Source of the DNA: Vitrella brassicaformis CCMP3155 | Taxonomy: Eukaryota; Protista; Chromerida | Reading direction: 5' to 3' | Length of the DNA stretch: 64,000 bases | Assembly (NCBI GenBank): GCA_001179505.1 | Contig: CDMY01000947.1 | Location: 62,001-126,000 of the forward strand | Shown: piece by piece, positions 43,824 to 62,011 of the stretch | Position numbering within the stretch: position 1 is the stretch's first letter | Layout: each line of letters starts with the position of its first letter | Position numbers and translations under genes: made by a program | The notes under the pieces: generated by a model | The model's input: only the letters and a program-made list of their open reading frames with translations | The model's database searches: none | Told to the model about the DNA's origin: nothing

Positions 43824-46800
43824 TCACTCTCCCAGCATCTTCCTTCTCTCATCTGCTCCAAGGTCAGGAGACGTGGGGGACTTGGGAGGCATCACCGGTC
43901 TGCCTTGCGAATGCTGTGACCCCGTCATCTGCGAACCGCCCATGTTGGAGCCAGCCAAGCGGCCAGCAGCAGCCTTGGAAAGCTCCTTTACAAAGAACCC
44001 TGCGGTTGAGCCTCGCGGCCCCTGTCGCAGGTGAGCAAGGGTGGCAAGATCCACCGAGATAGACACCCGTCTCATGTTGGTCTCGGCCTTCATGATGACC
44101 TCCGAGCTGTCGGACGTGCCCGTATTAGATGTGTCTTGGCGCCCTGGCGGCTTCCTGTCGTCAGGTCCGCTGCCAGACAAACCCGACCCTTCAAGGCTTC
44201 TGCTGCTCCTCTCCATTTTGGGCGATGACTTGTGTGATGAGAGCACGCTGGATGAGCGTCGGGAGTCGCGGAGGTCCGCGTCTTCGATGATGGCGTCCAC
44301 ATCGATTTCGATGTTGGGGGGCTTCCGCTCCTGGATGGAGCAGCGTCGGTTGGAGTTGCGAGATGATGCTCGGTCGCTGCTGTGGAACGACTGTGCAAGA
44401 TCTGGCTGTTCCTCGTCGGGTGCGGCCTCACCATCGCCGGAAGCGTCATGCGGGGCGTCATTGTCTGCCATCTCATCCCACATGCCTGGGTCAAGGGAGA
44501 ATGTCTCGATATCTGTATCTTCTGCAGGGTTTCTTCTCACGTATACCTGATTCATCGTCTCCTTCACCCTGGTCTCCGCCATGTTGATCCGACTGCTCCA
44601 GTGATGACCCATGCCGTAACAAGTCGGCCTCCTGTTCGTCGCTGTCTGTGGAAGACAGGAACAGGGGAGGAGGGGCCGCGTCGTCGACCTCGTCGGCTTC
44701 TATCCGATAGGCGCTTCGTGCGCCCGTCAGCATTATGCTGCTGCGCCTCATTTGGTCAAGGATTGTGTCGGCGTCATCTGCATATGAATCCTCCACAGAA
44801 AGAATCTCCTCCGACCGCTGCCGGCTTTCTTCCGGCTGGCTGTCTTCGGGGTCGTGCTGTGGCTGTTGGCTCAGGTCAGGCATCTGCTGGTACACCATGG
44901 ACCCTCTCGGTGCGCGCGTTGGGGCGATGGACATGTTGAAATCAGAGGGCATCTGCTGGAAGGCAATGGAACCTCGAGGAGCTCGTGGAAGCACGACGGA
45001 CTCGTTGAGGTCCACCTTCTTGACTGCGAGGATGTTACCTTTTCCACTTGACGGAGATTTGCGAGCCAGCCGGACCCTCAGAGCGGCCTGAATCTTCTTT
45101 GCTGCTTCTTCTTCTTCTGCAAGCTGGTTCTGACTGGCCTCCCAGCTGCTGCCCAGCACCTTCGACGCAAGCACGGCGGACATTCGCCGGCGAGCTTGGT
45201 GGCCTCTGATGTGTTTCTGCACCGTGAGGATGGCGGCAGTGAGATCTTGTGTCTCGCTGTGCACAGGCGGGCCCTTGTCGGCGTCGGCGGTCTCCTCGGC
45301 CTCGGTCTCCTCAGCTTCAGCTTGCGGGGTTGATTGGTACGCGGGGGAAGGCTCGTCTTGCTGGCTGCACTCCTGTTGGGCCTCGCCCGGCATGTCTCCG
45401 CCTGCATCGCCCAACTCATGCCTTTCATCCCCGTCTTCGTCCAAAGTCTCCTCTTGAGTGTCTTGCTGGATGTCTTCCTCTCCTTTTTCGCCCTCCGATC
45501 TTTTGTGCAAGTCGACATCGCCTTGTGCCTGCTGTTCATGGTCATGCTCATCTTGGGCTTGCTCTTCAGAGGCCTCGGCGTTCACCTCCTCGTGTGTGTC
45601 GACATCCTCTCCCTTGCTCTCGATAGGCTGGTCCTCCTCGCCTTCGTCTGCTGGTCGATCGGCCGCTCGTGGGCTCCCAGCTATGCTGCTCGACACGTGT
45701 TGGATCAGATGAGGGACATACTCTTGCGCGGCGAAGCTGGCTTCCAATTCAGCGGCGGACGACGTGACAGGGACGGGAAGGGCGGCCGCTTCTTCCTGTG
45801 GCGCTTCTTGCGCCGCAGCAGTTTCTTCATCTTCAGCCGTGCGCGAAATATCCTCGTCGTGTCTGTCTTGGTCCGCCGGCATGGCTGACAGGCTTTTGGT
45901 GAGGTCGCCCACGTATGCACGGACAGCGGCGTCGGGAGTGATGGGTTCCTCGACCTCCTCATGATGTGCGCCGCCAATGGCTTCATGTTCCTCCACTGAA
46001 GTGATCTCAACCTCTGCGGCAGCTGGCTGGTCTTCCTCGTGCGCCGGTTGCACAGCTTCTTCATTCATGTCTCTTAATGGCTGCTCCGTCTCAGTCTTCT
46101 GAATGATTGGCGCTTGTTTGACTTCATCCGCTCGTTCCTTTTTGATGTCAGACGTGAGCCGTCTCGCCTGTCGGCCTCTCTCACACGCTTGCAAGCGAAT
46201 TGCTGCTTCTTCTCTCTTTCGCTTCAGTTCTGCGTAGCGTTGTTGTGCCGACCTTCGCCGCTGACGGGAGCAGAAAACACGACAGACGGGTTCTTACATA
46301 CACATAGACGTGTGTCGCTTCTCCTTTATGTACCTCATTCTTCTGTATAATGCGGGCGGCCCTGACTTGCCTCTCAAGCTCGCCTATCTCCGTCTGGAGC
46401 CAGAAGTGCTTGTCGTTCCACTCGCCCTCAGGTCGCGGCCTCAGCTCCAGGCGCTTCTTGCGCTGTCTCATCTGACGCTGGATCCTTCTCGCAGCATCGT
46501 CCCTCTTCACAGCCTCGTGCTGGTCTTTCTTAACTGCTTCGTCTTGCTTCATCTTTTCGATGGACCGTCTGGCCATCCGTCCGCGAGCGTGACGCTGCAC
46601 CTCGATCGCCGCTTTCTCCTGCCTCTCTTTGAGCAGACGGGCCGCCTCTCGCTTTCTGTCCTCCTCCTCTTTCCTCTTCGCCGCTTCGTCTTGTCTCTTG
46701 GCCTCCTCCTCTTTTCTCTTGGCTGCCTCCCTCGTGGCGATGGAGTCACGTCTCGCAGAGCGGCCGTTGGGCGCTTTCTGATCAGTCACAGCTGGTGCTG

Positions 46801-49323
46801 GCTTATGTGGCTCTTGTGTGCGTTTGAGAGGCGGCGATGCGGCACGCGGAGGGAGCGCGGCGCCGTGGAGCTTTTCGCCACGCTTTGGCATGACCGTCAC
46901 CGGTCGGTGCTTTGCCAGGGAATCTGGGTGCTTCCTGCATGCATGACACAGAAACGGAGTGCCCAGTTGCCGTCTGTGTTGCAATGGTGGTGTCTCACGC
47001 TTGCAGTGGAGACGCGTCATCATCCTTCTGCCGTGATCGCCAGGCCGTTTGTATCCGCGTTGCCGCCCACTTGCGAATGTATTTCAGCCGAGGGCTCGAG
47101 GTGTGATGATGGTCGGACGGCTCTGAAACACCAGTCACAGCCACCTCACAGAAAGGTATGTGTTTGCGCGTGTGCAAAGTCTCTTCATTCGCCGAATGCC
47201 TACTTGAGATGGGAGGAGGCCGAGGGGTCATGGTACTTGACTGCAAGGAAAAGAGCAGTGGATCGCAGATACTGTCGTTACTTCACACTAGGCCTACATG
47301 TGAAGCTGAAGATCCCGGCATTGTGGGAAGCTGCAGCCGGCCACCTGTGGCGTCTCTTTCTGACGCGTCTTGCGGTTCCTCCGCCACGACCGACAGCTCG
47401 TCACCCGGCCGTCTCCGTGTCGGTTCGTCAAGAGGCTGCAGGTCGTCTGGGGAGTAGAAGTTGATGCGACTGTTTGAAATAGGATAGGATGTGTGCATGT
47501 CTGGGCACCGCCACATGTCAATTCTACGTACCTATACGGCCTGTCGGGCAGCACGGGCAGTTCTCGGCCACTGGCCGCGATGACCTGCTCGTTCTCCTCT
47601 CCCCTGTGAGTCATGAGCGGCGTCTCACCCCTGCTTAGTGGCCGCAAGTCGCCCTCACTTATCTCGACGTCAACATCGAGCATCGGCGAGGGCGATGGTG
47701 GCGTGAGGGGCAACGCAGTGGGCGGCCGAATTGGAGAGGGAGAGGAAGCGGGACGGGCCTATCGACGGACAAGACATAGAGGGGTGTGGATGCAGGCGGG
47801 TGTAGATCGACGTGATGGTGTCACGCACCTGTGGCTGTCGCATTCCCGATAGCACAGCGTTTGTGATTTGTGGTGATGGCCGGTATGTCGAGCCCATGGC
47901 GTAGCGGTACCCACGCTTGCCCTTCAAACCCTGCGCGACCGACACATTCAACGACACAAACATCCCTGAACGGGCCCGGCCTTCCCTTTTTGTGCTTTCC
48001 CATCTCACCCTTTGTTTGGGCGAGGCCTTCGGCGGGGTAGTGGGCGAAACAGACTTTGGAGGCCGCCGAAGGCCTTCCCCTTCGTTCCAGGACGAACGGC
48101 AGCCAGGCAGATAGTCCGACGGCGATCGCAGCGGGGCTGTCTCTCTGCTGTCCCTCTGCTTCAGACCATACGCATGGAACAGCCTCCTCGCTCGCTCAAG
48201 CGGCACCTCAAGGGCCGCGTCATCTTCGTGACTTCTTGGCCGCTCCTTTCTTGGCATCTTCCTGCGTGGGTGCTGCTTGTTGCGTGTTGGGGAGCGGGTG
48301 CGCGGGGGCAGGTAAGGAGACGCTGCGGGGGGAGGGGACGACGCACGCTGTTCCATCTCGTCGAGGTTCTTGCCCAGTGCGACGGTGAGCGGGTGGTCCT
48401 CACCGAGTCCCTCCCTGGCCACGTGCCTTCCTTTCTCAAAGAAGAGCGTGGCCTCGCCGTACTGGCCCAGATACTCCTTCTCAACCCCCACATTGTGGTA
48501 GGCGATGGCCATGGTCGTGATGTCGTCCTGGGACGGGGGGATGGACTCCTGCTGCAGGGCTGCCAATCGGTGGCTGGCGATAGTGAGAGCGGTCGACGCG
48601 TGGCGGAGAGCCTTGTCGTGTCTGTGTGAGTGACCAGGCACAGATGATGCAGAAGTCTACCTCTGTCTTCTGTCACGTACTTGTGGAGTTTCGACAGTAT
48701 GGCAGATATGTTGAGATGGGTGCCGGCAAGTGTGCATACATCCGCAGACGACTGCTGCTGAAGGCGAATCGCCTGCCGGAAATACTCGAGACTTGACGAA
48801 TACTTCTTGGACGTTTTGTACAAGCAACCCTGCACATCAGACAGACACAATGCATGACCAAGGGCGTCTTCTGACATTAGTTATTTGGCAACTCACCAGA
48901 TTGTTGAAGGTAATGGCAAGCAGCTTGACGGCGGCGGCTGGGTCCATCGGTTCAGGAGGCGCCTTGGCATTCCACCAGAGGTCGCCCCCCTGCTTGATGA
49001 GGGCAACGGGCGGAGGGGGTGGGGGAGGGGCGCCTGCCTCCGCCAACAGCGTCTCAGCCTGCTTGAGCTTGTTAAAGGCGACATCAAGCTTGCCTGTATT
49101 GAGATGGAAGAAAGGACCACAAGGGGAAAAGAGGCCAGTGTGTGTGCTCGTGTTCGAGAGAACCTTTTCGCAGGAGCTCCATGCCCTTTCTGTTGCAGTC
49201 CAAAACAACACCCTCCAACTGCCAGTGAGGACGCACAAACGTCAGGGTGTCCATTCGTTCTCTGTCCATGATTGTGCGATTGCGCCGTACCTGCCCATTC
49301 GTAAGCCTGTCCCTTCGCCGCAT
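43824..49323 (-). CDS. Large TPR-repeat protein with about 7 IQ-like motifs and acidic low-complexity region; multi-exon
   Basis: TPR-like LAITFNNL|GCLYK...SLEYFRQAI, AGTHLNISAILSKL, AIAYHNVGVEKEYLG; IQ-like AATRIQTAWRSR, AAIEVQRHARGRMAR, VQKHIRGHQAR, AAKKIQAALRVRLAR. Confidence 0.72.
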
Positions 49324-49517
49324 GGTGTTCTCAGTGCAGCAAAACAGGGGGACGCCGCGATTCCAAAACATATTCCAAAACAAATACAACGCGAACTTGA
49401 AGGGACCGAAGGGAATTGAGCTTGCCGATGCGCATGCAGATCGCGGGGGGGGCGAGCTCGCGCCCCCGCCAAGCCGTCAACTTCAAACGTCAATTGGACA
49501 ACTTGAACTTCGACGCA
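49324..49517. promoter_or_regulatory. Putative compact bidirectional promoter (TPR-IQ / DLEC1)
   Basis: 100-200 bp between divergent starts; contains a TTCCAAAACA direct repeat and a GC-rich palindrome. Confidence 0.45.
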
Positions 49518-52500
49518 ATGGGAGCCAGCTTCGTGCGGCCAACGTATGATCACTACCCACAGCCAATGTACATGTATCCTCACCCAGTCCAGCCCATTCA
49601 TGTCCCGACGCTTGTGGTGAGTGCCAGCACCCTGCAGACCACGTGGGGTCTGTGCATGGACACGTCTGTGTGTGTGCGTGCGCTTGCTACAGATTATCCC
49701 CGTCTACGAACGCATCATGTGAGTGAGAAACGGCCGTGCACTGCAGAGGGGTGTTAGAAAGGCACAGAGAGCTTTCTTTGACAACGTGTGCCCAGATACA
49801 GGGAGGTGCCTGTCGTCCGCCGGCGAACCGTCTACCAGCCTAGAATCTTTTGAGAAGGAGATCATCAGGTGAGCGGACGGCCAAGAAGAGCACGGACATC
49901 GGCGTAGTGCCAACCACGTACATGCACTGCACTCTGTCTGTCTGTCTCTCTCTCTCTCTCCTCCCTCTCCCAGATACATTCCCAGATACGAGGTGGAATA
50001 CAGAGACTGGTTTGTCGAGATCGAATACTAGCTCAACATAGTACGCCGCCTGCCCCGTATCAAAAGGGACGGCCTACCATACACATGCGATGCCATGATC
50101 TGCCTTTTCAGATGGGCGCCGACAACGGAGAGATGGAGCCAGCTCGTGGGGATGCCCGTCGGCTGTTCCAGGATGCATTCAAGGAGCTGTACCAGCCGGA
50201 GGATGTGTCAGAGGAGCAGGCCGGTGCGGGCGGGGGAGAGGAAGAGGGGGAGGAAGCCGGGGAAGGGGATGAAGCAGAGGAGGCGGAACAGGACAAGGAG
50301 GAAACCAGGGTGGAGGTCGCCACTTCAGTGGAGGAGACCATGCTACAGGTGAGTCAGCCATGCATCCCCCATTGCACAGTTGCAGCAGATGGTGACCACT
50401 GTGTTGTCCTGACCTCAATCAGGCCGTTCGCGACGAGATGACCGGCACCATTCAGTCCCTGCGCGAGATGGAAGCCATGCTCCACGCCAAGAAGAAAGAA
50501 GCTGACCTAGCCGACCAAGAGACAGACGAGAGAGTGCGAGCAGAAGGTCTCAAGCTCAGAGCACAGTACCCAATCGGCGACGGCGAGTTCACTAGACTCC
50601 TGGATGTGGAGGGGGACAAGGTTGCGGAGAAGAGGCTAATCCTGCCATCAGACGTCATGAGGGACGAGCTGGAGAAGATAGAGATATCCCAGGGAGTTCT
50701 GTGGAAGCACGCCGACTGCCTGCAGAGGGCACGGCCCTCCGAGCCGACCTACCTCAAACCGACGGGATCGATCCTCATTCGCATGCAGGCCAGAAACATA
50801 CGGAAGACGTACGCGTGTAGAGAAGGGACACACACACACGCGCACACACGCATAACGGTCAGACAGATGTGTGTATATGGTTTATCAGCCTCACTGCCGA
50901 GCGGCGAGAGACACTGGCGGCCAACGTGCAAGAGAGGGAAAGACAGCGGGTAAAGATCAAGCCCACGATGCGTCCCGAGGACCTCAAGGCCAACCAGGAC
51001 ATCCTGCGACGGATGAACAAGCGCATCAGTTTCCTCCAGAACCCGCGATACAAGAAGGCCGACGGCCAAGGCAGGTGCCCATTCACCGTGCTGCCGAATG
51101 TTGTGGTAAGAGACACGGTGTCCACGATCACACCCAGTATGGATGGATGTATGTTTGTCATTCTCCAGACGTTCCGGTCTTTCGAGATAGGCGGCGTGTA
51201 TTCGATCCCAGTCAAGTTCATCAACACGTCGGCCGTCGGCAGGCGGCTGCGCGTCATGCCCTCGTCCATGCCCCACTTCACCATCACACCCATCACCTTG
51301 CTCAGACAGCTCAATACCAACACCAACACGCAGAGCTGCGAGGGTGTGGTCGCGCCCGGATTGACCGCTCAGGTCAGTTGACTGAACTCATCGATCCATT
51401 CGTCCAGCCATGCGTGTCCGTGCCTGGTTTGGATGTATGGGTGCAGATAGAGGTGCGTTTCTGCCCGACATCGATAAGGGACATCGACGACCAGCTGACC
51501 ATCCACACGGAGGAGGGGGAGTTTCCTTTGGTTGTCCGAGCAAGGAGACACCTGCCCTTACTCCGGTTCGCCGCAGCTGCTGCTGACGCTGCTGCTGCCG
51601 GCGGTGGTACCTCTGCCAGAGGCGGGTCGGAATGGAATGGCAGCGGCCTCATCGACTGCGGAAACACGCTGGCCGGCACAACGATCAACCACACGTGAGT
51701 GAAGAGATCCTGTTGCATGTCATCCACCTGTGTCTCTTTGTCTTTCTCCAGCTTGACATGCCGCAATTCTGGCGGCACAGCAGACTTCTGTCTCAAGATG
51801 GCGCATGAGATCGGTCAGGGAGATGAGGAAAACGATGATATGGACGAAGAGGCTGAGGGCGAAGATGCGGCGACTCCTCTGGAAGTTGGCGCATTCTCCG
51901 TCACGCCGAGGCGCTTCTCGGTCAAGCGGGACGAACAAGTGACGCTCCACACAACATTCAGGTGGATCAGTGCACAACGAAATCGATCCACCTACAGCAA
52001 CAATACCTGCTAACGTCTGTGAATGTGCGGCACCAGGGGCACTGAGGTCGGTCCATATGAGGAGGTGCTGTATGTAGTGAGTGACGACGGACAGCGGTGG
52101 CAGATTGACATAAGGGCACTGACCGAAGCAATGCGGGTCGAGCTCACACACATGGCCGAAAAACCATGCCTTGGTGAGTGAGAAGTTGGGCAAAGACAGA
52201 CGACAGACAGAGAGGCAGAGACATGACAGTGCTGTGTTCGGGACCGCGATCAGCTTCCTCATTCGCCTCTCATTGGCGCACGCTTGAAGAAGAGGAGGCC
52301 CTGCCAGATGCTGATGAGGGTGGCATGCCCGCCTCCGACGTGCTGGCATGGAGGTCGCTGCCCTGGCAACTGGACTTTCCAAACGTGCGGGTGAGCAGAG
52401 CCTTTCCAACGAGTGGCGTCCACATGTACGTGTCTCTGTCTCCTCAGGTTGGTGCGGCCGACTCCCACGAGATGACTCTTTTCAACGCCGCCTCCCTCCC

Positions 52501-55500
52501 CATATCCCTCAAATGGACGCTGCAATCGCCTCCCGAACACGTCGCGGCTTCCCTTATATCCCCCATGACACTCACCCTCCCAGTCTCCCTCCTCTCCGAG
52601 ATCCAGAAATGGCAGCAGTCGCCCTCCTTGCCATTTGAGATCCTGCCCATGAAGGTGACGCTGCAGCCGGGCGCCAGCCAGACCTTCACATTCAGCTACG
52701 CACCGGAGAGCGATGCCGATGATCGGTCAAGGCCGAAACCGGATCTCGCGGTGGCTCTTCTGCAAGCCGTTGGGATTACAGAGGAGTCTTTGCTGACGCT
52801 GAACGACCTGCTGCATCTGCAGAAGGAGGAGGGGAGATCTGTCGATGGCGGGATACCTCTGTGGGGAACCGATGCGCAAAGAGAAGACGACGGTGACGGT
52901 GATCGTGCCTTATTTGCCTCGTCTCTCACCCTTGTTCGCCTCTCTGGCTCCTCTGCCCGTCCGCTGCTGACCGTCTCGCCGCCCACAATCGAGTTCTTCC
53001 CGCCGGTTTTTCCCTTCATCACCCACACCGCCCACGTCTCCCTCTGCAATCCCTCTGCATACCCAGCAGAAGCCGCGTTCAAATCTGGCGCGATCATCCC
53101 CAACACGGCCGCACAGAGAGACGGCAAGGATGGCAAGCCGATCGTGATCATCCCAGGGCAGGCCACCGACACCCACCCGACACCGCATTTCTTCGCCATC
53201 ATATCGGTGTCGCCATCCCATCTGGTGATCCCGGGTAACGCTACGAGGGAGGTGTGTGTGAGCGTGGCTGCCTACGAGACAGGGGTCTTCTCTGGCGAGC
53301 TGGTGGCTGATGTGAGTGATGGTGGTCAGCCCTTGACTGTGGGTGTCCGAGTTGAGGTTGGGGGTCCTGTGGTTCGAGTCAAGGAGCCGTCAATGCTTAA
53401 CTTTGGCATTGTAGGCAAGCACAGCGAACAGCAAATCGTATTCTCACGGCCTCTGTCTTCTCAGGTGCCGGCTCGTTCGGCCCATCACTGCGCAGTCACT
53501 CTCGACAACCCCACTAAGCTCCCTGCCCTCGCCCGCATCGTGCCTCAGTGCCAAACGTCTCCACCGCCTTTGCCGCCTTTGCCATACACGTCTCATGCGG
53601 CAATTGTCGAGGCTTTTCACGGAGGCGAATGCCACGCTGCCGACGAAACAGACACGGATATCGAGACAGAAGCAGAGGAGGAACAGGGATACCCTGGTGT
53701 GTGTGGGGTGTGCGGATGTGTAGACCGGACAGGGAGAAGACACAAGGTACGTGCGGCAAGAGAGTGGGTTCCGTACGAGACCATCTCTTGTGTTGTGGTG
53801 TGTAGGGTGGTGGTGGTAACGAGCGCGTAAGGGTGTCTCCGTCTTGGGTGATCGTCCCGCCAGAAGGCGAGGCTGTGGTGAATGTCACGCTCATGACACA
53901 CCTCATCGGGCTGTATGCCTCCACTGTCAAGGTAGGGTCACCAGTAGGTTGCTGACGGGTCAGTCACGTGCGTATGTCATTGGTCCCCGTTCAGCTGGAC
54001 TGGTTTGGGATGTCGGATGACGAATCTGATCGCATTGTGCTCGATGTCTTTGCTGACGTACAGCTGCAAAAGTAAACAACCAAGCTCCCAGCCGCCATAC
54101 GCCACCACTCACCACTAGCGCCTCCTACCCATGTGTGCATGCAGGCTGACCAGTTCTCCCGCCTCCCTCTCCCTCCCCGTATGCTACCTCGACCAGCCAT
54201 CCAAACCCCTCACTTTCACACTCACCAACCACTCCGACCTCCCAGCATCCTTCCAATGGCAGTGCCCAGGCATCAACAAGGAGGGCCAATTCGACTGCGA
54301 CGACGTCCCCACCGATCCGAGCACTGACGGCCTGGCGGTGCAGATCGTGCCTGCCTCCGGGCAGGTGCGAGGACGGGAGAGCATCGAAGTGAAGGCCGTG
54401 GTCATGGGCAGAGTGGTGGGCCCGATGGTCGGGGGGCTTTGTCGCTGTCTTGTTGAAGGCCTCGTCAGGCCATTCTGGATGAAAGTAAGGACGACAAGAA
54501 GGACGGGCACAGCTGTTTAGACACACATCCGAAGATTCCTCTTCTGTTCGCCCGGTCAGGTGTCTTCCCCATGTCGTGGGCTAGAAGTCCATTATCGCAT
54601 TGTGCCCCTCCCCACATTCACAGCCCTCCTCAACGAGATCGCGCAGCAGTCGCAGGCAAGGGCAGCCAGCCAGGCGTCCAGAGTCACAACCAAGTCTAGA
54701 CGGACAACCGCCGGCACGAGACGCACGCCCTCACGCACCCCCTCGCCCACGCCCCCATCCAGTCGATCACCCAGCCCGACGAGCTATGCCTTATCGGCCG
54801 TGTCATTGGCCAACGAGAAGATTGGGGAAGGTGGCGTGGTGGGCGACGAGACGGCGAAGCTGGTTGACTTCGGTACCTTAGACATGCTGCCTGCCGAAGG
54901 CAGCGGTGAGCACAAGAAGACAATGGTGCTGGTCTTCACCAATCGCTCGGGCATCCCAGCTACACTCAAGGTACACACACATCTATGCGAGACTGAAAGC
55001 CCGGGAGAAGAAGAGAATTCCGCGTGTGTATGTCTCAGCTGAATATGCGAACATACTCGGCTCCGGGCGGCCCTCCGCCGCCCCTCGGCCAGCCTGCAAC
55101 GTCTCCCGTGTCTATCTCCCCCTTCTCGACCTCTAATGCTCCGTCAGCAGTGGCGCCGACACGAACGGGGGCGCCCTCACAGAGGAGTGGTGGCACATGG
55201 CGATCAACAGTGGCGGGGAGGGGAGCACCCAAACAGGCAACTGCTGGTGGGTGATGTGACAAGGCCGAAGAATGGACGACACGCAATGTGTCTTTGTGCC
55301 GCAGTGAAATTGTTGTCGAGCGGACACGAGATGTTCTCCTTCTCCTCACCTGAAGGGCGGGTGAGTCAGGCACACACAAGCGGAGCAGACACCGCAAGGG
55401 CCTCCTGCTTATTGTCCTGCTGATTATTGGTGCGTTTGTTGGTTATGTCAGCGTCACCGTGAGCACCAATACGCGGAGGATGAGCGCCGCAGCGCCCTGC

Positions 55501-58135
55501 AGGACGGCCGGGGCTTCGCCGTCAGACTCACACCGAACGACGCACTGCTGCAGCCCTTCGAGACGCTCCACGTGGTGGCCGACTGCTTTGCTGGTATAAC
55601 TGGACACACACAGATGCCTTCACAGGTCGCATTTATGCATTGTCTCTATGCTGTGCCTGCGCAGATATCCCTGGTGTTTTGTCTGACGACATTATGGTGT
55701 CTCTCGTGCGGCCGTCACGAGGCGCCTACAACGACAAGACAGAGGAGGGGTGGTGTATGCCAGTGAGGTCTGAGGCCATCGGCAAGCCGCTTCTCTTCGC
55801 CCCACAGCAAGTGAGCACACCACAAAGATAGAGAGAGAGAGAGAGAGAGACGGAGATGCGTACACACATGTCCGGTCGTTTGGCGTGGGCAGGTGGGCGT
55901 CAACCTGTCGTCTCTAATGCCTTCGCTCGACTGCGGCATAGTAGTGAAGCAGAACGACGTGCATGCGCCAGCCAAGAAGAAGAAAGCTGTTGCTGCCTCC
56001 GTGGAAAGCGATATTCCCGAGCTGGTGCATGATCCCTCTGCAGGACGCTCCACTTACACACTCAAAGTGAGCGAGACACATACAACACATATGTGTCCCA
56101 CTCCCGAATGCACACGCAGGTCCAGAACGCCTCCTGTCGGCCGATGAGCGTCGCGTGGCAGCTCTTTGACCTCCTCTCCTTCAACGACCCCTCCCTTCGC
56201 AGATCGCCCATCACCCTCTCCATCAACACCGACGGCGAAACTCCCTCTCTCACCTTCGAGGCCAACCCGCCAGACATGGAAGCACCACCCACACCGCTGC
56301 CCTTCTCCATCTACCCTGTCAGCCAGACTATCATGGCCAAGGCCACGGAGACATTCTACGTCTCATTCGACGGCACCAAATGCGCGGCTGGCAGCCATGG
56401 GGTCCGGGCGATCGCCAAGACCGAGTGGGCGGCTGTGAAGAAGAGGAGGCCGACAACGACCCAACAGGCGGCGATTGAGGTGGTCGACACAGAAGCCGGA
56501 GGAGAACGCCCCAACAATGGCGTGCGCGAGGTGCGCTCTCTGCCACCGATGCAAGACGGAAATGACGACTCTGATGACGAGCGAGACCACCATGAACAAA
56601 TGCAAATCGACGACGAAGAGCAAGAGCACGCAGCACAACCAAACAACCAGGATCAGCATCCTGACACGGCCACCAGCCCGGAGCCGCCCCCCTCTCTCCC
56701 CCTCCCCCCTCCCCCTCTGCTGTCGATCGACCTTCTGGCCAGCGTGGAGACACCTCGCCTGGTCATCGACAAGAAGCACGACAAGACCACCGGAGAGCCC
56801 ACAGTCAAGTTCCAGATATCAACCGTCGATATGCTCATGGCACTGCGGCGGAGGAAGAGGGGAATGTCAGGGAATGAAGACGTCACCATGGGTGCGGGTG
56901 AGGTGCTGATGAGTTTGTTAGAGGCTGTAAAGGACGGCGAGAGGCTGGACGGCAAGCATCCGCTGACCACGGCCGCACTTGTGACGAAGAGGTGGGTAGG
57001 GATGGAGGGTTGCATGGGTCCAAAGATTATGTGTCATCCCTTCGTTCGCAGGGAAGTGTCTCTGACGAATCCACTTACATGTCCCATCCACTGCCAGCTC
57101 CATGTTGAGGGAAGGTTTCGCCTCGAACACATCTCCATTGGCAGTGTGACGTCCTCATCCGTCAAACTGGAAGACAAACGGACCTCAAAAGTGAGCGACA
57201 AATCTTCACGTGCATGGCATGCATTATAACGTGTGTCTGTTCATGAAGCCGTTCCATTTGCCGGGCCATTCGTCAGTGCACGTCACTGTGGCTTTCCGCC
57301 CGGCCCCGATGCACCACTGGCACCCCCCCACCGACCAGTCAGCCGAGGTGCTCTTCAACGGCACGCTCAAGATACACTTCAACCCTTCCAAAGCCGCGAA
57401 ACAAGTATATAACACCACGAGCACACGCACAATGCACACACTATGCACGTGTGTCTCTGATCAGGTAATCGACCCCCAGACAGTCCGTCTCGTTGGCGTC
57501 GGTCGGCGGCCGTCGGTGTGTGTGCTGACCGAGGACCTCAGCAAGTCCATCCCTTTGTCCAACACGACCGTCGGCTACCGCGCCATGGGCGTTCCCCCGC
57601 CATCAGACCAAGATAAGGGGCGATACCCCTGGGGCAAAGCGGGTGAGTGTGTGGTCGACTTCGGTTTTGTTCATGTGGGCGGCAAAGTGGAGAAACGGAG
57701 GTGGGTAGAGCTGTACAACGCAAACTCTGTGCCCGCGGCATGGTAAACTGCTGATGGCTGGCTCAGCCTGGCTGGGAAAGCAAAACGATAAAGCGCCGAC
57801 AGCAATTGGGTGCGTGTGTCTTCAGGAGGTTGTTCCACGTGGCGAGACAGCACAAACAGATCATCAGCGAGGTCACCAAGACGCTCAAAGTAAGCACACG
57901 GGCAAGCGGGCAAGAGTACGGACAAACAACTGCGCGTCCGTGTGCGTAGGAGAGGGAGGATGAGGGCAGTCAAGACGACCCATCCGTGTTTGTGTTTTCG
58001 CTGACCGAGGGCGTGGTTATCGGTCCGACAAAGCCTCACTGGCCGCTGCCCCTCGGCCCTGCACTGCCAAAGGCCCAGCCACACCCGTCAGACAGCTTGC
58101 TGCTGCCCGCACATATCAACATCACATTCAAGTAG
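49518..58135 (+). CDS. DLEC1: DLEC1/CFAP81-like ciliary protein with multiple ASH/MSP-like beta-sandwich domains; multi-exon (alternative start 49428)
   Basis: ISFLQNPRY...FTVLPNVV|TFRSFEIGGVYSIPVKFIN...RRLRVMP...VAPGLTAQ|IEVRFCP...IDDQLTIHT...FPLVVRAR; LIDCGNTLAG; repeated F-x-N ASH-like starts; stop TAG 58133-58135. Confidence 0.72.
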
Positions 58136-58690
58136 GGGAAACGGGGAGGGAGGGAACCGAGGGACACACCATATGTGCGTGTGTGATATCAGGCCTGTCC
58201 GCAACGTCCTGTACAAGTGTCGCTACCGTGTGTTTGTTCATGGGGGTGTGAGTGTGGACTTTGTCTGCCGCGGGTGCGGCAGCTACGATGAGGAGGACGA
58301 TGCATACGACGCTGACGACGCATGACTGACAGACATGCACGCGTGCATGGACAAAGTATTTGTGGCTCTGTGTGTGCTTCATCGGTCAGTGCATTTGTCA
58401 ATCAACACGTGATGATGGAGATCACACAGGGAGAGGGAGAGGGAGAGCAACCCCCTCTCTAGCTCTCACAGGCACGAAAACACAGACAGACAGACAGACA
58501 GAGAGACAGAGAGACAGTGAAGGGCAAAGAGCCCCTCGGTGTGTGGATGTGTCTGCTGTGTGGCCTCCACGCGCATTCACAAAAATCGCAACCCCCACGC
58601 GTAATTGGGGTGCACCACTAGCAAGCTGCAGAAAACTGTGGGTGGCATCTACAAGTTGTAAACACGAAGTAAATTTGAGTCTCGGGAACA

Positions 58691-61600
58691 ATGATCTGCC
58701 ACCGGCATATCCTGCCGCTCTTCTATCTTCTTGTCGTCCATGCACAAGGTCGGTCAGGAGACCGTCCAGCCGAATTGAGGCCATTCTCCACAGCTCTTCC
58801 GTCTGTTCCTATTTGCAGGCCAAACGTTAACCAGCGTGTCTACCCTTCTCGCTGCTGCAGCCATTCAGGTGGCAGATTCGCTGATGCATCTATCCATCCG
58901 TTGGTCCATTCGCTGAATCTCTTTCCTGTTCGTTCGTCCATGCAGGGTGACGTACTGTCGGTTCTCTCTCACTTGCCGGCCGCAAACACCAGCCAGACAG
59001 CGTACACCGACTTCGAGTTGGCAGAGGCTCTGTTTCGCGCTGTTGAAGGCAAGGCGCCCCTTGCCACAGCCCGCCTGATCCTGCCTCACGTCGGCAACCT
59101 GAACGTCCTAGATGTGCATGGCAATTCTGTGCTCCACTACGCGGTCAAGTTCAATACGAGCGACATGATGCTCATCAGGCTACTGGTGGGGGCCGTGCCA
59201 TCGCAGCCTGATGGCAAACGTGTGGCCATCAATGGGCGCAACCACAGAGGAAGGACGGCAATGCTTGATGCAGTGGACCTCCCCTCGCACAAACCTCAGG
59301 CGCGAAGCGCTGACATGGTCCAAACACTTGCGGAACTTGGTACGGACACTCGTATACACTGGCACTCATGCACAAGCATTACACGTGCGTCACATTCAGG
59401 GGCGGACTTGGAGCTGGCAGGGCGCGGTCCTCTGACTGGCACTCTTGGGCATATCACCCCATTGATGTTTGCTGCGGACCAGGTGCGCTGCAACTTCCCG
59501 CCTGCGACGGCCTTCCATCTTTCCTTTCTTGCATGTCACGCAGCGCAACGAGGCGGCGTTTGTCCGTTTGCTCGGGCTGGGAGCGGACGTCAACGCGACA
59601 AGGCACGTCCAGGAAGAGCGCAACGGCAAAGTGATCGATAGGCAGCTTCAGCTGAGTGTCCTCATGTTCCTATCGAACTGTAATTGCAAGCCACACGAGA
59701 AGGACTGTCGGCAGCGCGACGAGCGCATGCTCGAGCTGGCGATCACGAAGCACGGAGCTCATGTGTCGTTCATCAGCCAAGACTACCTCAGAAGGACAGT
59801 GTTGCATTTTGCTGCAGAGCGGTGAGAGAATGATCACTCAAGCGAAAAGCCAACTGCGACATTCAGCCAGTGATCTTTCCCATTCGTCCTTTCTAGTGGC
59901 TGTCGTGTGGCTGTGGAGACGCTGTTGCGACATGGAGCCGATCCAAGTATCTCGTCCTCTGACGGACAGACCCCCGCAAATCTCGCGGCCAAAAAGGTGC
60001 GCAACACCGTGGATCTTGCGAATGAAGGCCGTGTTGCGCTCACTTACCGCCCCTGCCTGTCTGCAGGGCCATGCGGAGCTAGCTGCCCTTCTACGCCGGG
60101 CTGAGGGTAGGGAGCTGCGGCACATGAAATGATTCTCGTCTCGCTCTTGCCTTATCCTTTGCAGCGGAGGAGAAGGCCAAGATGCGGCCCTTCGCAATTG
60201 CCTTCGCCACAGCATGTGTCTTCTGGGCCTTGCTCGCATCCTGCGTCTGTGCGATCTTCTACAGACTGACCAGCACCCGCTGTCGTCGTCGCCTGTGGGG
60301 AGTCCTCTCCCATCCCCTCTGGCTGCTCTGGCGAGGCTGTTGTTCCGTCGGACAGCTCGTGACGTACGCCTGTTTGCTCTTCGTCGGGTCGACTCTGCAA
60401 GGGTGCCTGTGGTTCATGTCTCTCGTCGCCTCCCTGGCCCCAAGAGCAGCACAGCACGAACGCCCTGCAGACATCAACCTCGAGGACACATTCAACAGTC
60501 AGCTGAGAAAGGGTACGTATGGCTGGCCTGTCTTTCTTTCTTTCTTTCTTTTCTTGCTTTCTTCCGTGTGTGTGTGTGTGTGTGTGTTAGAGTGTGGTGA
60601 CTCTCAGAACAAGCGTTCCACAAAGAAGCATCGGCGATCGTCGGCGTCCGTCAGAGCGAGAGCTGGTAATGATGATGGTAGGATCGTCGCAGAGCTGGCC
60701 GAGGACGAAACCGAATGCTCCGAATGCACACATGCCAAGTAGGTGAAGAGAAATGGACGAGAATTGTGGACGGCAAAGTGAATGTCCTGTCTCTGTCTGC
60801 CTGCCCGTCTGTCTGTATGTCTGCCTGTGTGCGTGCCTGCAGGTAAAGCTGCTTCAGAAGCTCCAGAAGCGCGAGACAGCTCTCGAGGAGGCGCTCAAGG
60901 GACGACAGAGGTACACACACGATCACAGTCGCTCGGCTGCGTGGACGGATGGAGGCATGGGTGGGCGGATGGGTCTCTCCTTGCTCCTACTTGCCGCTCT
61001 TTTCAGTGCCGAGAAGAAGGGCGAGAGGCTGAGTGCTGCTCTGGAGCGATACAAGGCGGAACTCCACGACCTCAACCACAAGTACACAGGCCGAGTGACG
61101 GCGTGCACACGGATATGCGCTCATTCTTCCTGTGTTTGTGTGTGTAGGTCGTCGATTGAGAAGGAGGCCGTCGCTGCTCTAAAGGATGACCAACAAAGGC
61201 AACACGCACATATATGCAGAGATCGTCCATATATCCACGAACCGGTGTACACGATGCTTCTCTCTCCGTACGTCTCACTGATCAGGCTGAAGGATGAGAA
61301 TGCGCGTGCAGACAACACCATCAAGTCCCTTACGAAAGAAAGAAACAGGTGCGTCACTCAGGATACCTGCGCGCCAGGTGTGTGCTGCGAAGCGTTCTTC
61401 CTTATTTCTTTGCAGATTGGCGACGGACCTGACCAGTATGCAGCGCGAAAAGGACGAGGGCGTCGGCAAACTCCAACAGTACTGAAGAGACACAGGCAGC
61501 GATATCGACATGCACGGTTTTGTCTCTGCCCATGCAGGCTCGAGAAGGCTCAGAACGGCGTGACTCAAGAAGGTCTGGTCAACACACGAGCCGTCAGGTA

Positions 61601-62011
61601 CGTAGGCCTCTGCATGGATGGATGGATGGATGTCTCGTTGTCAATGGTCTTTTGCCCAGTGTGTGTGAGGACCGTGTGCGCGTGGCGGCCACCGAGCGCG
61701 AGGTGCGTGCCATCTCCCAGCAGGCGGCCAGCGGCATCGACCAGCTGTACCGACTCCACAAGGCGTGCCTCGCCAAGCTGTCCGACCTCGAGCAAGACAA
61801 CACCAACACCGACACCACCAAGAGCAGCAGCAAATGTGCGGTGTGTTCTGAGCACAGCCCGTCGGTTGTGTTCAGTCCCTGCAGCCACGCTGTGTGCGGC
61901 TTCTGCTGGGCGAAGGGGGGCAGACAGCAGACCACAGACAGCCCGCCCAAGTGCCCCAAGTGCTGCGCAGACATTGCTTCGCACGCGCTCGTCGAGACGA
62001 AAGAGGGCTGA
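58691..62011 (+). CDS. Signal peptide + ankyrin repeats + TM + coiled coil + C3HC4 RING (receptor-like E3 ligase); multi-exon
   Basis: Signal MICHRHILPLFYLLVVHA; ankyrin GNSVLHYAV, ITPLMFAAD, RTVLHFAAER, GQTPANLAAKK|GH. Intron 60107-60164 joins in frame to EEKAKMRPFAIAF (TM). RING CAVC-x11-CSH-x2-CGFC-x15-CPKC. Confidence 0.72.

What the first reader, a model, noticed from the sequence alone, without database searches (positions are those of the whole stretch)
58691..62011. Receptor-like E3 ligase: signal peptide, ankyrin ectodomain, TM, coiled coil and RING in one gene
Seen: the ORF track suggests separate ankyrin (stop 60132) and TM/RING (ATG 60182) ORFs only 49 nt apart. A canonical 58-nt GT-AG intron (60107-60164, pyrimidine-rich acceptor) removes the ankyrin stop and joins GAG G|CG GAG GAG AAG GCC AAG ATG in frame. 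Later junctions (donor 60517 with acceptor 60592 or 60607; intron 60666-60842) give ...PSEREL|VKLLQKLQKRE and lead on to a C3HC4 RING. Established: ankyrin repeats are almost always intracellular, and membrane RING ligases with sensing ectodomains are known with PA domains (RNF43/ZNRF3/GRAIL). Inference: a luminal or extracellular ankyrin sensor coupled to ubiquitination, an architecture I do not recognise. A second hydrophobic stretch (about 60350-60440) leaves the topology uncertain.
Basis: partly seen in the sequence, partly recalled or inferred. Interest (0 to 1): 0.8.

Follow-up and report, generated by a model that had tools for sequence, protein, structure and literature searches.

The report
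Ankyrin membrane gene beside RING gene
In the alga Vitrella brassicaformis, a gene for a membrane protein with a signal-peptide-like start and ankyrin repeats lies 45 bases upstream of a coiled-coil RING ubiquitin-ligase gene. The sequence does not show that the two are spliced into one receptor-like ligase.

Summary
The window is Vitrella brassicaformis CCMP3155, contig CDMY01000947.1.

- **Ankyrin to membrane joint:** the 58-nt intron 60107-60164 is real. The public gene model (453 aa) uses it. That model has a signal-peptide-like start, 6-7 ankyrin repeats, one strong membrane helix and one marginal one.
- **Membrane to RING joint:** this is not supported. The public annotation ends gene 1 at 60669 and starts a 251-aa coiled-coil/C3HC4 RING gene at 60715.
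  - It reads 60608-60665 in the frame with the worst codon usage.
  - It skips the strongest donor in the region (60739).
  - At least five GT-AG paths give a fused frame, and none stands out.
- **Topology:** charge distribution puts the inter-helix loop in the cytosol. If the second helix spans the membrane, a fused RING would sit on the ankyrin side.
- **Homologues and RNA:** no homologues were found in any searchable collection.

Most likely there are two polypeptides (about 0.5).

An earlier, unchecked scan note (s1-231172) reports the same architecture elsewhere in this genome.

The parts
58691..58748 (+). Exon 1: start codon and signal-peptide-like segment MICHRHILPLFYLLVVHAQ(G)
   Evidence: It matches the N-terminus of public model P0001 exactly. 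The hydrophobic core ILPLFYLLVV scores KD11 2.25. Stop codons lie just upstream in the same frame.
58819..58868 (+). Exon 2 (GQTLTSVSTLLAAAAIQ), flanked by introns 58749-58818 and 58869-58945
   Evidence: The phases fit. The acceptors score 14.3 and 12.1 bits, within the top 1-2.5% of all AG sites. P0001 uses the same exon.
58946..60106 (+). Ankyrin-repeat exons E3-E7 (58946-59339, 59400-59482, 59544-59821, 59897-59996, 60067-60106), giving 6-7 repeats
   Evidence: Pfam Ank_2 scores 52 bits against a cut-off of 27.3 on P0001. Atlas structural matches to ankyrin solenoids cover residues 17-320. Exon junctions restore the repeat consensus.
60107..60164 (+).
   Evidence: It is used in public model P0001 (...RRAEAEEKAKMRPF...). 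Its size matches the gene's other introns (58-96 nt).
60165..60516 (+). Membrane exon E8: TM1 at 60191-60262, an R-rich loop, a marginal TM2 at 60356-60439, and tandem donors at 60513 and 60517
   Evidence: KD19 is 2.26 for TM1 and at most 1.7 for TM2. Summed dG is -1.5 and +2.0 kcal/mol. Net charges are loop +6 and after TM2 -1. An exhaustive search found no homologue.
60608..60669 (+). Disputed exon. In frame 1 (annotation) it reads EQAFHKEASAIVGVRQSESW and stops at TAA 60667-60669. In frame 0 (reader) it reads TSVPQRSIGDRRRPSEREL and ends at 60665.
   Evidence: P0001's C-terminus. Codon log-odds are +2.6 to +4.2 in frame 1 and -3.9 to -5.0 in frame 0.
60715..60738 (+). Annotated 8-codon first exon of the RING gene (MLRMHTCQ), followed by intron 60739-60842
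   Evidence: P0004. Donor 60739 scores 11.5 bits and acceptor 60842 scores 15.2 bits, the strongest pair in the region. Codon score for the exon is poor, -2.7 to -2.9.
60843..61597 (+). Coiled-coil exons E10-E15 (60843-60910, 61007-61081, 61148-61198, 61286-61348, 61416-61478, 61538-61597)
   Evidence: The phases fit. The true frame scores best in every exon with an independently trained codon model. AlphaFold predicts helices 2-122 (block-mean pLDDT 79-97) and 132-184. Hydrophobic period is 3.45-3.5, matched by 1 of 300 shuffles.
61660..62011 (+). Last exon E16, with the C3HC4 RING at 61835-61963 and stop codon TGA at 62009-62011
   Evidence: Pfam zf-C3HC4_3 27.3 bits. Best match among solved structures is the BRCA1 RING, E 7.8e-5. 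Ligand spacing was read directly from the sequence.

Best explanation
The locus most likely makes two polypeptides, as the public Vitrella annotation has it.

**Product 1 (453 aa; 470 aa if ankyrin repeat 5 is kept whole)**
- It enters the secretory pathway through a cleavable-looking signal peptide.
- It displays a solenoid of 6-7 ankyrin repeats on the luminal or extracellular side.
- It is held by one strong membrane helix, followed by a basic cytosolic loop and a second, marginal hydrophobic helix.
- Inferred role: a membrane-anchored protein-binding module.

**Product 2 (251 aa as annotated, of which 243 aa come from confident exons)**
- It is a soluble protein with a roughly 170-residue coiled coil and a C-terminal C3HC4 RING.
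- Inferred role: an ordinary dimeric cytosolic ubiquitin ligase of the coiled-coil-plus-RING type.

**What is shown and what is inferred**
- Shown: the exons, phases, domains and hydrophobic segments, and that the 58-nt intron joins the ankyrin part to the membrane part.
- Inferred: the two-product outcome and all functions.

The two reading frames are 45 nt apart on one strand, and in the same frame on the mRNA defined by the strongest splice signals. They are therefore probably co-transcribed, or descend from a fused gene. A minor fused isoform is possible.
For: - The public models P0001 and P0004 sit at 58691-60669 and 60715-62011. They came from Augustus with strand-specific RNA-seq intron hints (PMC4501334).
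- They contain a GC-AG intron and a weak acceptor. An ab initio run would hardly choose these, which suggests read support. This is my inference.
- Splice scores come from a matrix trained on the neighbouring gene. Donor 60513 scores 4.1 against 2.4 for 60517. Donor 60739 scores 11.5 against 4.8 for 60666. Acceptor 60842 scores 15.2.
- Codon log-odds for 60608-60665 favour the annotated frame by 6.5-9 bits.
- Charges are +6 for the loop and -1 after the second helix. This fits a luminal tail, not a cytosolic RING, after that helix.
- Vitrella genes are very closely packed, with a median 92 bp between genes.
Against: - A 45-nt gap leaves no room for a 3' UTR, a promoter and a 5' UTR.
- The annotated 8-codon first exon of the RING gene has a poor codon score.
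- Exons E10-E13 have no in-frame ATG, so the RING frame needs an upstream coding exon.
- Ankyrin-plus-RING chains are common in eukaryotes. Unchecked earlier scan notes say they are common in this genome.
- No RNA evidence was seen directly.
Confidence: 0.5

Rival explanations
1. One 714-aa type I protein has a cleaved signal peptide, a luminal or extracellular ankyrin sensor, a single membrane helix, and a cytosolic coiled coil and RING. Ligand binding outside would control ubiquitination inside.
For: - An open 715-codon path exists with GT-AG introns.
- The N-terminus looks like a signal peptide, and there is a +6 cluster after the first helix.
- The gap between the annotated genes is only 45 nt.
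- The second helix is only marginal, at +2.0 kcal/mol.
- PSEREL|VKLLQ reads as one continuous helix.
Against: - It needs donor 60517 (C|GTATGG, 2.4 bits), which overlaps the better donor 60513.
- It ignores donor 60739 (11.5 bits).
- Its frame for 60608-60665 scores -3.9 to -5.0, lower than the true frame of any other exon tested with the same model.
- The annotation splits the locus.
- It also needs the second hydrophobic stretch not to span the membrane.
Confidence: 0.1
2. One fused chain that is entirely cytosolic. The N-terminal hydrophobic segment does not act as a signal peptide, and the two helices form a membrane hairpin. The result would be a membrane-tethered ankyrin-RING ligase that works like the plant XBAT or animal MIB ligases.
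For: - Ankyrin and RING domains normally work in the cytosol.
- AlphaFold draws two long helices, 307-361 and 369-414, with a short break between them (low confidence).
- Several fused splice paths exist; the best-scoring is 60513-60607 plus 60640-60842.
Against: - It would place the +6 loop in the lumen, against the positive-inside rule.
- The N-terminus has the shape of a classical signal peptide.
Confidence: 0.12
3. A decaying fusion. An ancestral ankyrin-membrane-coiled-coil-RING gene was interrupted by the GAT-repeat stretch GTAATGATGATGGTAGG, which carries four stops. The downstream RING frame is now silent or poorly translated.
For: - On the mRNA defined by the annotated introns, both reading frames are in the same frame. 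Only W***W*DRRRAGRGRNR separates them.
- The stop cluster lies in a short triplet repeat.
Against: - The RING exons keep strong codon bias, all eight metal ligands and intact phases across seven introns.
- The shared frame has a one-in-three chance of arising by accident.
Confidence: 0.1
4. A fused protein imported past the ER into the space around the complex plastid. A ubiquitin system works there (the ERAD-derived import machinery of red-lineage plastids), so both the ankyrin and RING domains would lie in a cytosol-like compartment.
For: - The leader looks like a signal peptide and is followed by a stretch rich in Ser, Thr and Ala.
- From my own knowledge, not tested here: Vitrella has a four-membrane plastid, and plastid-associated RING ligases with signal peptides are known in diatoms.
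Against: - The 26 residues after the predicted cleavage site contain no Lys or Arg and have net charge -1. That is unlike a transit peptide.
- There is no sequence similarity to any known component.
Confidence: 0.04

Closest known systems
PA-TM-RING ligases (GRAIL/RNF128, RNF13, RNF43/ZNRF3 class)
   Different: - The ectodomain here is ankyrin, not PA.
- The RING is C3HC4, not RING-H2.
- There is a long coiled coil and a second hydrophobic segment.
- A single chain is not shown.
- The review of the 49 human transmembrane RING proteins never mentions ankyrin.
Ankyrin-RING ligases (plant XB3/XBAT, animal MIB1/2)
   Same: N-terminal ankyrin repeats as the substrate-binding part, and a C-terminal C3HC4-type RING of the zf-C3HC4_3 kind.
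   Different: - Those proteins are soluble and cytosolic, with no signal peptide or membrane helix.
- The XB3/XBAT31 RING model scores only 15.5 bits against a cut-off of 50.
- Here the two domains may lie on separate chains.
Coiled-coil plus C-terminal RING ligases (BRE1-like, RNF8-like)
   Same: P0004 alone has a long helical coiled coil followed by a terminal C3HC4 RING. Language-model look-alikes include BRE1-type clusters at 0.90-0.91. Matches to solved structures are BRCA1, RNF8 and TRIM25 RINGs.
   Different: No BRE1 domain hit was found in Pfam. The protein is much shorter than BRE1 and has no detectable orthologues.
Secreted ankyrin proteins of protists and periplasmic ankyrin proteins of bacteria
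   Same: These combine a signal peptide with ankyrin repeats. The predicted secretome of Plasmodiophora brassicae is rich in ankyrin and RING domains (PMC8595600). The only other hit to P0001, P0003 (from an ENA assembly, source organism not given), has a hydrophobic signal-peptide-like N-terminus followed by ankyrin repeats.
   Different: Those proteins are soluble and released. This one carries a strong membrane helix after the repeats.

Membership tests
Ankyrin repeat proteins (Pfam clan Ank) | Repeated 33-residue helix-loop-helix units that pass the Pfam threshold | tested here: met
   Ank_2 52 bits (cut-off 27.3), Ank 42.4 bits and Ank_5 43.5 bits on P0001. Atlas structural matches to ankyrin solenoids reach TM 0.76 by target.
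RING finger, C3HC4 type | Eight zinc ligands with spacing C-x2-C-x9-39-C-x1-3-H-x2-3-C-x2-C-x4-48-C-x2-C | tested here: met
   The spacing read from exon 16 is x2, x11, x1, x2, x2, x15, x2. zf-C3HC4_3 scores 27.3 bits against 27.0 on the exon, but 25.2 on the whole of P0004.
RING finger, C3HC4 type | E2-dependent ubiquitin ligase activity | not testable with these tools
   This needs an in vitro autoubiquitination assay.
PA-TM-RING receptor-like ligases | PA domain in the ectodomain | tested here: not met
   No PA hit in the Pfam scans of the exons or of P0001; only ankyrin families were found.
PA-TM-RING receptor-like ligases | Ectodomain, single membrane helix and RING on one polypeptide | tested here: inconclusive
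   The annotation has two genes. Fused paths exist, but none is best supported. A second hydrophobic stretch scores +2.0 kcal/mol.
PA-TM-RING receptor-like ligases | Cleavable N-terminal signal peptide | tested here: inconclusive
   The n/h/c regions and VHA|Q are present. No trained signal-peptide predictor was available.
XB3/XBAT ankyrin-RING ligases | Family-specific RING (PF24921) on the same soluble chain as the ankyrin repeats | tested here: not met
   PF24921 scores 15.5 bits against a cut-off of 50. Membrane helices are present, and a single chain is not shown.
MUL1 / plant SP1 two-helix organelle RING ligases | GIDE domain between two membrane helices, then a C-terminal zf-C3HC4_3 RING | tested here: not met
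   No GIDE hit. The only link is an SP1 cluster appearing as a weak structural neighbour, TM 0.36.
Plastid-envelope (ERAD-derived) RING ligases | Bipartite leader: signal peptide followed by a basic transit-peptide-like stretch | tested here: not met
   Residues 20-45 have net charge -1 and contain no Lys or Arg.

The most novel reading that the evidence does not exclude
A single type I polypeptide in a chromerid alga places an ankyrin solenoid in the lumen or outside the cell and a coiled-coil RING ligase in the cytosol. This would be a receptor-like E3 with an ectodomain type not known in any transmembrane RING family. The tandem donors at 60513 and 60517 might act as a splice switch between an ankyrin-only form and a ligase-bearing form.
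Probability: 0.1. Interest if true: 0.75.

Novelty: new member of a known kind. Interest (0 to 1): 0.3.

Why it matters
- **If the fused reading were right:** it would be the first transmembrane RING ligase with an ankyrin ectodomain, and a rare case of ankyrin repeats working outside the cytosol in a eukaryote.
- **As the evidence stands:** the locus shows how easily a fused frame can be assembled in an intron-rich genome. Five or more GT-AG paths exist here.
- **What is still unusual without the RING:** the annotated 453-aa protein (signal-peptide-like start, ankyrin repeats, membrane helix) has an uncommon layout. A cheap topology test would be worthwhile.
- **A further open question:** two reading frames 45 nt apart, in the same frame on the best-supported mRNA, could mean co-transcription or recent gene fission in Vitrella.

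Tried and rejected
**Searches that gave nothing**
- Homologues to test the architecture were all blank apart from the proteins themselves:
  - the membrane exon against 1.84 billion representatives;
  - P0001 whole;
  - P0001:300-433, looking for transcript-derived fragments;
  - the RING exon;
  - two metagenome scans;
  - tblastn for paralogues within the window;
  - a look-up of earlier findings by sequence.
- Single-sequence AlphaFold of P0001 was too poor to use (pLDDT 45).

**Splice paths rejected because they hit a stop**
- Donor 60517 with the acceptor at 60590.
- Direct joins from 60513 or 60517 to 60843.
- The frame-2 path 60591-60738 (AAG then TAA).
- Donor 60245 within the coiled-coil part.

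**Other points**
- The plastid-compartment idea was kept only as a weak rival, because the stretch after the signal peptide lacks basic residues.
- A dynamic-programming exon finder without splice scores over-split the neighbouring gene. It was replaced by an iteratively trained version. That training set is self-derived, so its bit scores are rough.
Exons were searched by reference and the public models by their ids. The script only walked codons over exon coordinates to score the paths.
Full report
**Where this is.** The window is Vitrella brassicaformis CCMP3155, contig CDMY01000947.1 of assembly GCA_001179505.1. Window position equals locus L001 position plus 52690. An earlier scan note had named the organism, and the protein look-ups confirmed it.

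**Checking the observation.**
- The ORF list shows the ankyrin-frame ORF ending at 60132 and the next ORF starting at ATG 60182.
- I derived a gene model by hand from the sequence and the three-frame translation. I then checked it by phase bookkeeping.
- The model has 16 exons and GT-AG introns of 58-96 nt. The exceptions are one 177-nt intron and one GC-AG intron. It totals exactly 2145 nt, or 715 codons.
- The 58-nt intron 60107-60164 removes the stop at 60130-60132 and joins ...LLRRAE to AEEKAKMRPF....
- The exon junctions inside the ankyrin part restore the repeat consensus each time, for example ...TLAEL|G|ADLELAG and ...FAADQ|RNEAAFVRLLGLGADVN.
- The last exon carries a perfect C3HC4 RING. 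Pfam zf-C3HC4_3 scores 27.3 bits against a cut-off of 27.0. The best match among solved structures is the BRCA1 RING.
It runs into TGA after three codons.

**What the public annotation says.**
- An exhaustive HMMER search with the membrane exon found one real hit, the 453-aa public model P0001.
The ankyrin-to-membrane joint is therefore confirmed.
- P0001 then uses donor 60513, not 60517, with acceptor 60607. It reads 60608-60666 in frame 1 and stops at TAA 60667-60669.
- A second public gene, P0004 (251 aa), starts at ATG 60715 with an 8-codon exon (MLRMHTCQ). It uses intron 60739-60842 and then my exons 10-16, including the GC-AG intron.
- The gap from stop to start is 45 nt.
- The annotation came from Augustus with strand-specific RNA-seq intron hints.
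- P0001 also uses a poor acceptor at 59947, and P0004 a GC donor. I infer, but cannot show, that read hints shaped these models.

**Is the membrane-to-RING joint real?** No RNA tool was open, so I scored the alternatives.
- *Splice sites.* I built splice-site matrices from 39 introns of the upstream gene, inferred with an iterated exon finder. These scores are rough.

| Site | Role | Score (bits) |
|---|---|---|
| Donor 60513 (AGG\|GTACGT) | annotation | 4.1 |
| Donor 60517 (TAC\|GTATGG) | reader | 2.4 |
| Donor 60666 | reader | 4.8 |
| Donor 60739 (CAA\|GTAGGT) | annotation | 11.5 (top 0.3% of all GT) |
| Acceptor 60842 | both | 15.2 |
| Acceptor 60607 | both | 2.0 |

- *Codon usage.* With a model trained only on the upstream gene, the true frame scores best in 11 of 13 confident exons. 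With the larger training set the values are +4.2 and -4.9.
- *Number of possible paths.* At least five GT-AG paths give an open frame from exon 8 into exon 10. Their totals lie between 30 and 41 bits. The mere existence of a fused path is therefore weak evidence.
- *The best-supported mRNA.* The introns with the best signals (60513-60607 and 60739-60842) give an mRNA on which the two frames are in register. They are separated by TAA TGA TGA TGG TAG and 11 further codons.

**Points against two independent genes.**
- 45 nt cannot hold two UTRs and a promoter.
- Exons 10-13 have no ATG.
- The 8-codon exon has a poor codon score.

Vitrella genes are very tightly packed, with a median 92 bp between genes including UTRs. 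That softens the spacing argument but does not remove it.

**Topology.**
- The N-terminus has the shape of a signal peptide: MICHRH, then an 11-residue hydrophobic core, then VHA|Q. It is too short to register as a membrane helix.
- TM1 (residues 327-350) is strong, with KD19 of 2.26 and summed dG of -1.5 kcal/mol.
- TM2 (residues 382-409) is marginal, with KD19 at most 1.7 and dG of +2.0. The scale values were recalled from memory, so this is a rough estimate.
- The loop between the helices has net charge +6. The 15 residues before TM1 have +2, and those after TM2 have -1.
- By the positive-inside rule the loop is cytosolic. If TM2 spans the membrane, whatever follows it lies on the ankyrin side.
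I put that at about 0.1.

**Domains and relatives.**
- P0001 passes the Pfam ankyrin thresholds, and its Atlas model matches ankyrin solenoids.
- P0004 is predicted as a 120-residue helix (block-mean pLDDT 79-97) plus a 50-residue helix. Its hydrophobic period is 3.45-3.5, matched by 1 of 300 shuffles.
- Its look-alikes are generic proteins with a coiled coil and a terminal RING, including BRE1-like clusters.
- Neither protein has a detectable homologue in any searchable collection. The architecture could not be tested by comparison.

**Comparison with what is known.**
- The proposed layout works like the PA-TM-RING ligases, which have a signal peptide, a luminal binding domain, a membrane helix and a cytosolic RING (PMC4021871).
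- It fails membership on the PA domain and the RING-H2 type. The single-chain feature is unproven.
- It resembles XBAT and MIB ligases in pairing ankyrin with RING, but the family-specific RING model fails (15.5 bits against 50).
- Signal peptide plus ankyrin is known in predicted protist secretomes (PMC8595600). The only other hit, P0003, also has a hydrophobic signal-peptide-like start before its ankyrin repeats.

**Earlier scan notes.** These are unchecked. One reports the same SP-ANK-TM-CC-RING layout in two paralogues elsewhere in this genome (s1-231172). Others report many ankyrin/RING gene pairs. This modestly raises the prior for fusion, but I could not reach those loci.

**Verdict.**
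- Junction reads across 60513-60842 would settle it.

Exons were searched by reference and the public models by id.

Noticed in passing
window 59822-59947: Public model P0001 uses acceptor 59947 (PWM -6.0 bits) instead of 59896 (+2.5 bits). This drops 17 in-frame codons (GCRVAVETLLRHGADPS) that form the second helix of ankyrin repeat 5. It is either an alternative isoform or an annotation slip.
   Followed up: partly
window 61199-61285: A GC-AG intron (AAG|GCAACA ... GATCAG|G, 87 nt) is used in public model P0004. The 87 nt are also open in frame, so retaining the intron would insert 29 residues without a stop.
   Followed up: partly
window 60664-60681 and 60843-60846: The stop TAA 60667-60669 lies inside the candidate donor GTAATG. 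Because exon 10 begins GTAAAG, frame 1 ends in Trp-stop whether or not that donor is spliced. A run TAA TGA TGA TGG TAG sits in a GAT-type triplet repeat.
   Followed up: partly
window 60517-60607: This intron is built of a (CTTT)n run followed by a (GT)n run just before the acceptor. That fits the earlier scan notes on polar, U/G-rich 3' intron ends in Vitrella.
   Followed up: no
window 59670-59720: A Cys cluster, NCNCKPHEKDC (CxCx6C), lies in an insertion within ankyrin repeat 4. It could bind metal or form disulfides, which would fit a luminal location. Three N-x-S/T sequons (N50, N106, N212) lie in the ankyrin part, against roughly 1-2 expected by chance (my rough estimate, not computed).
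   Followed up: partly
window 58691-58945: The stretch containing the first two introns is open in frame 2 even when unspliced (65 codons without a stop). A retained-intron transcript would keep the frame. An in-frame ATG at 58940 lies inside the acceptor of intron 2.
   Followed up: partly
window about 44000-58325, + strand: The upstream gene is a very large, intron-rich protein with HYDIN/CFAP65/DLEC1-type Ig-like domains, a ciliary protein type. It ends at 58325, 365 nt before this gene's ATG.
   Followed up: partly
protein P0002 (not in the window): The only other hit to the membrane exon is a 966-aa protein made of about 18 copies of a Cys/Leu/Ser-rich unit. This is a low-complexity match, not a relative.
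   Followed up: no
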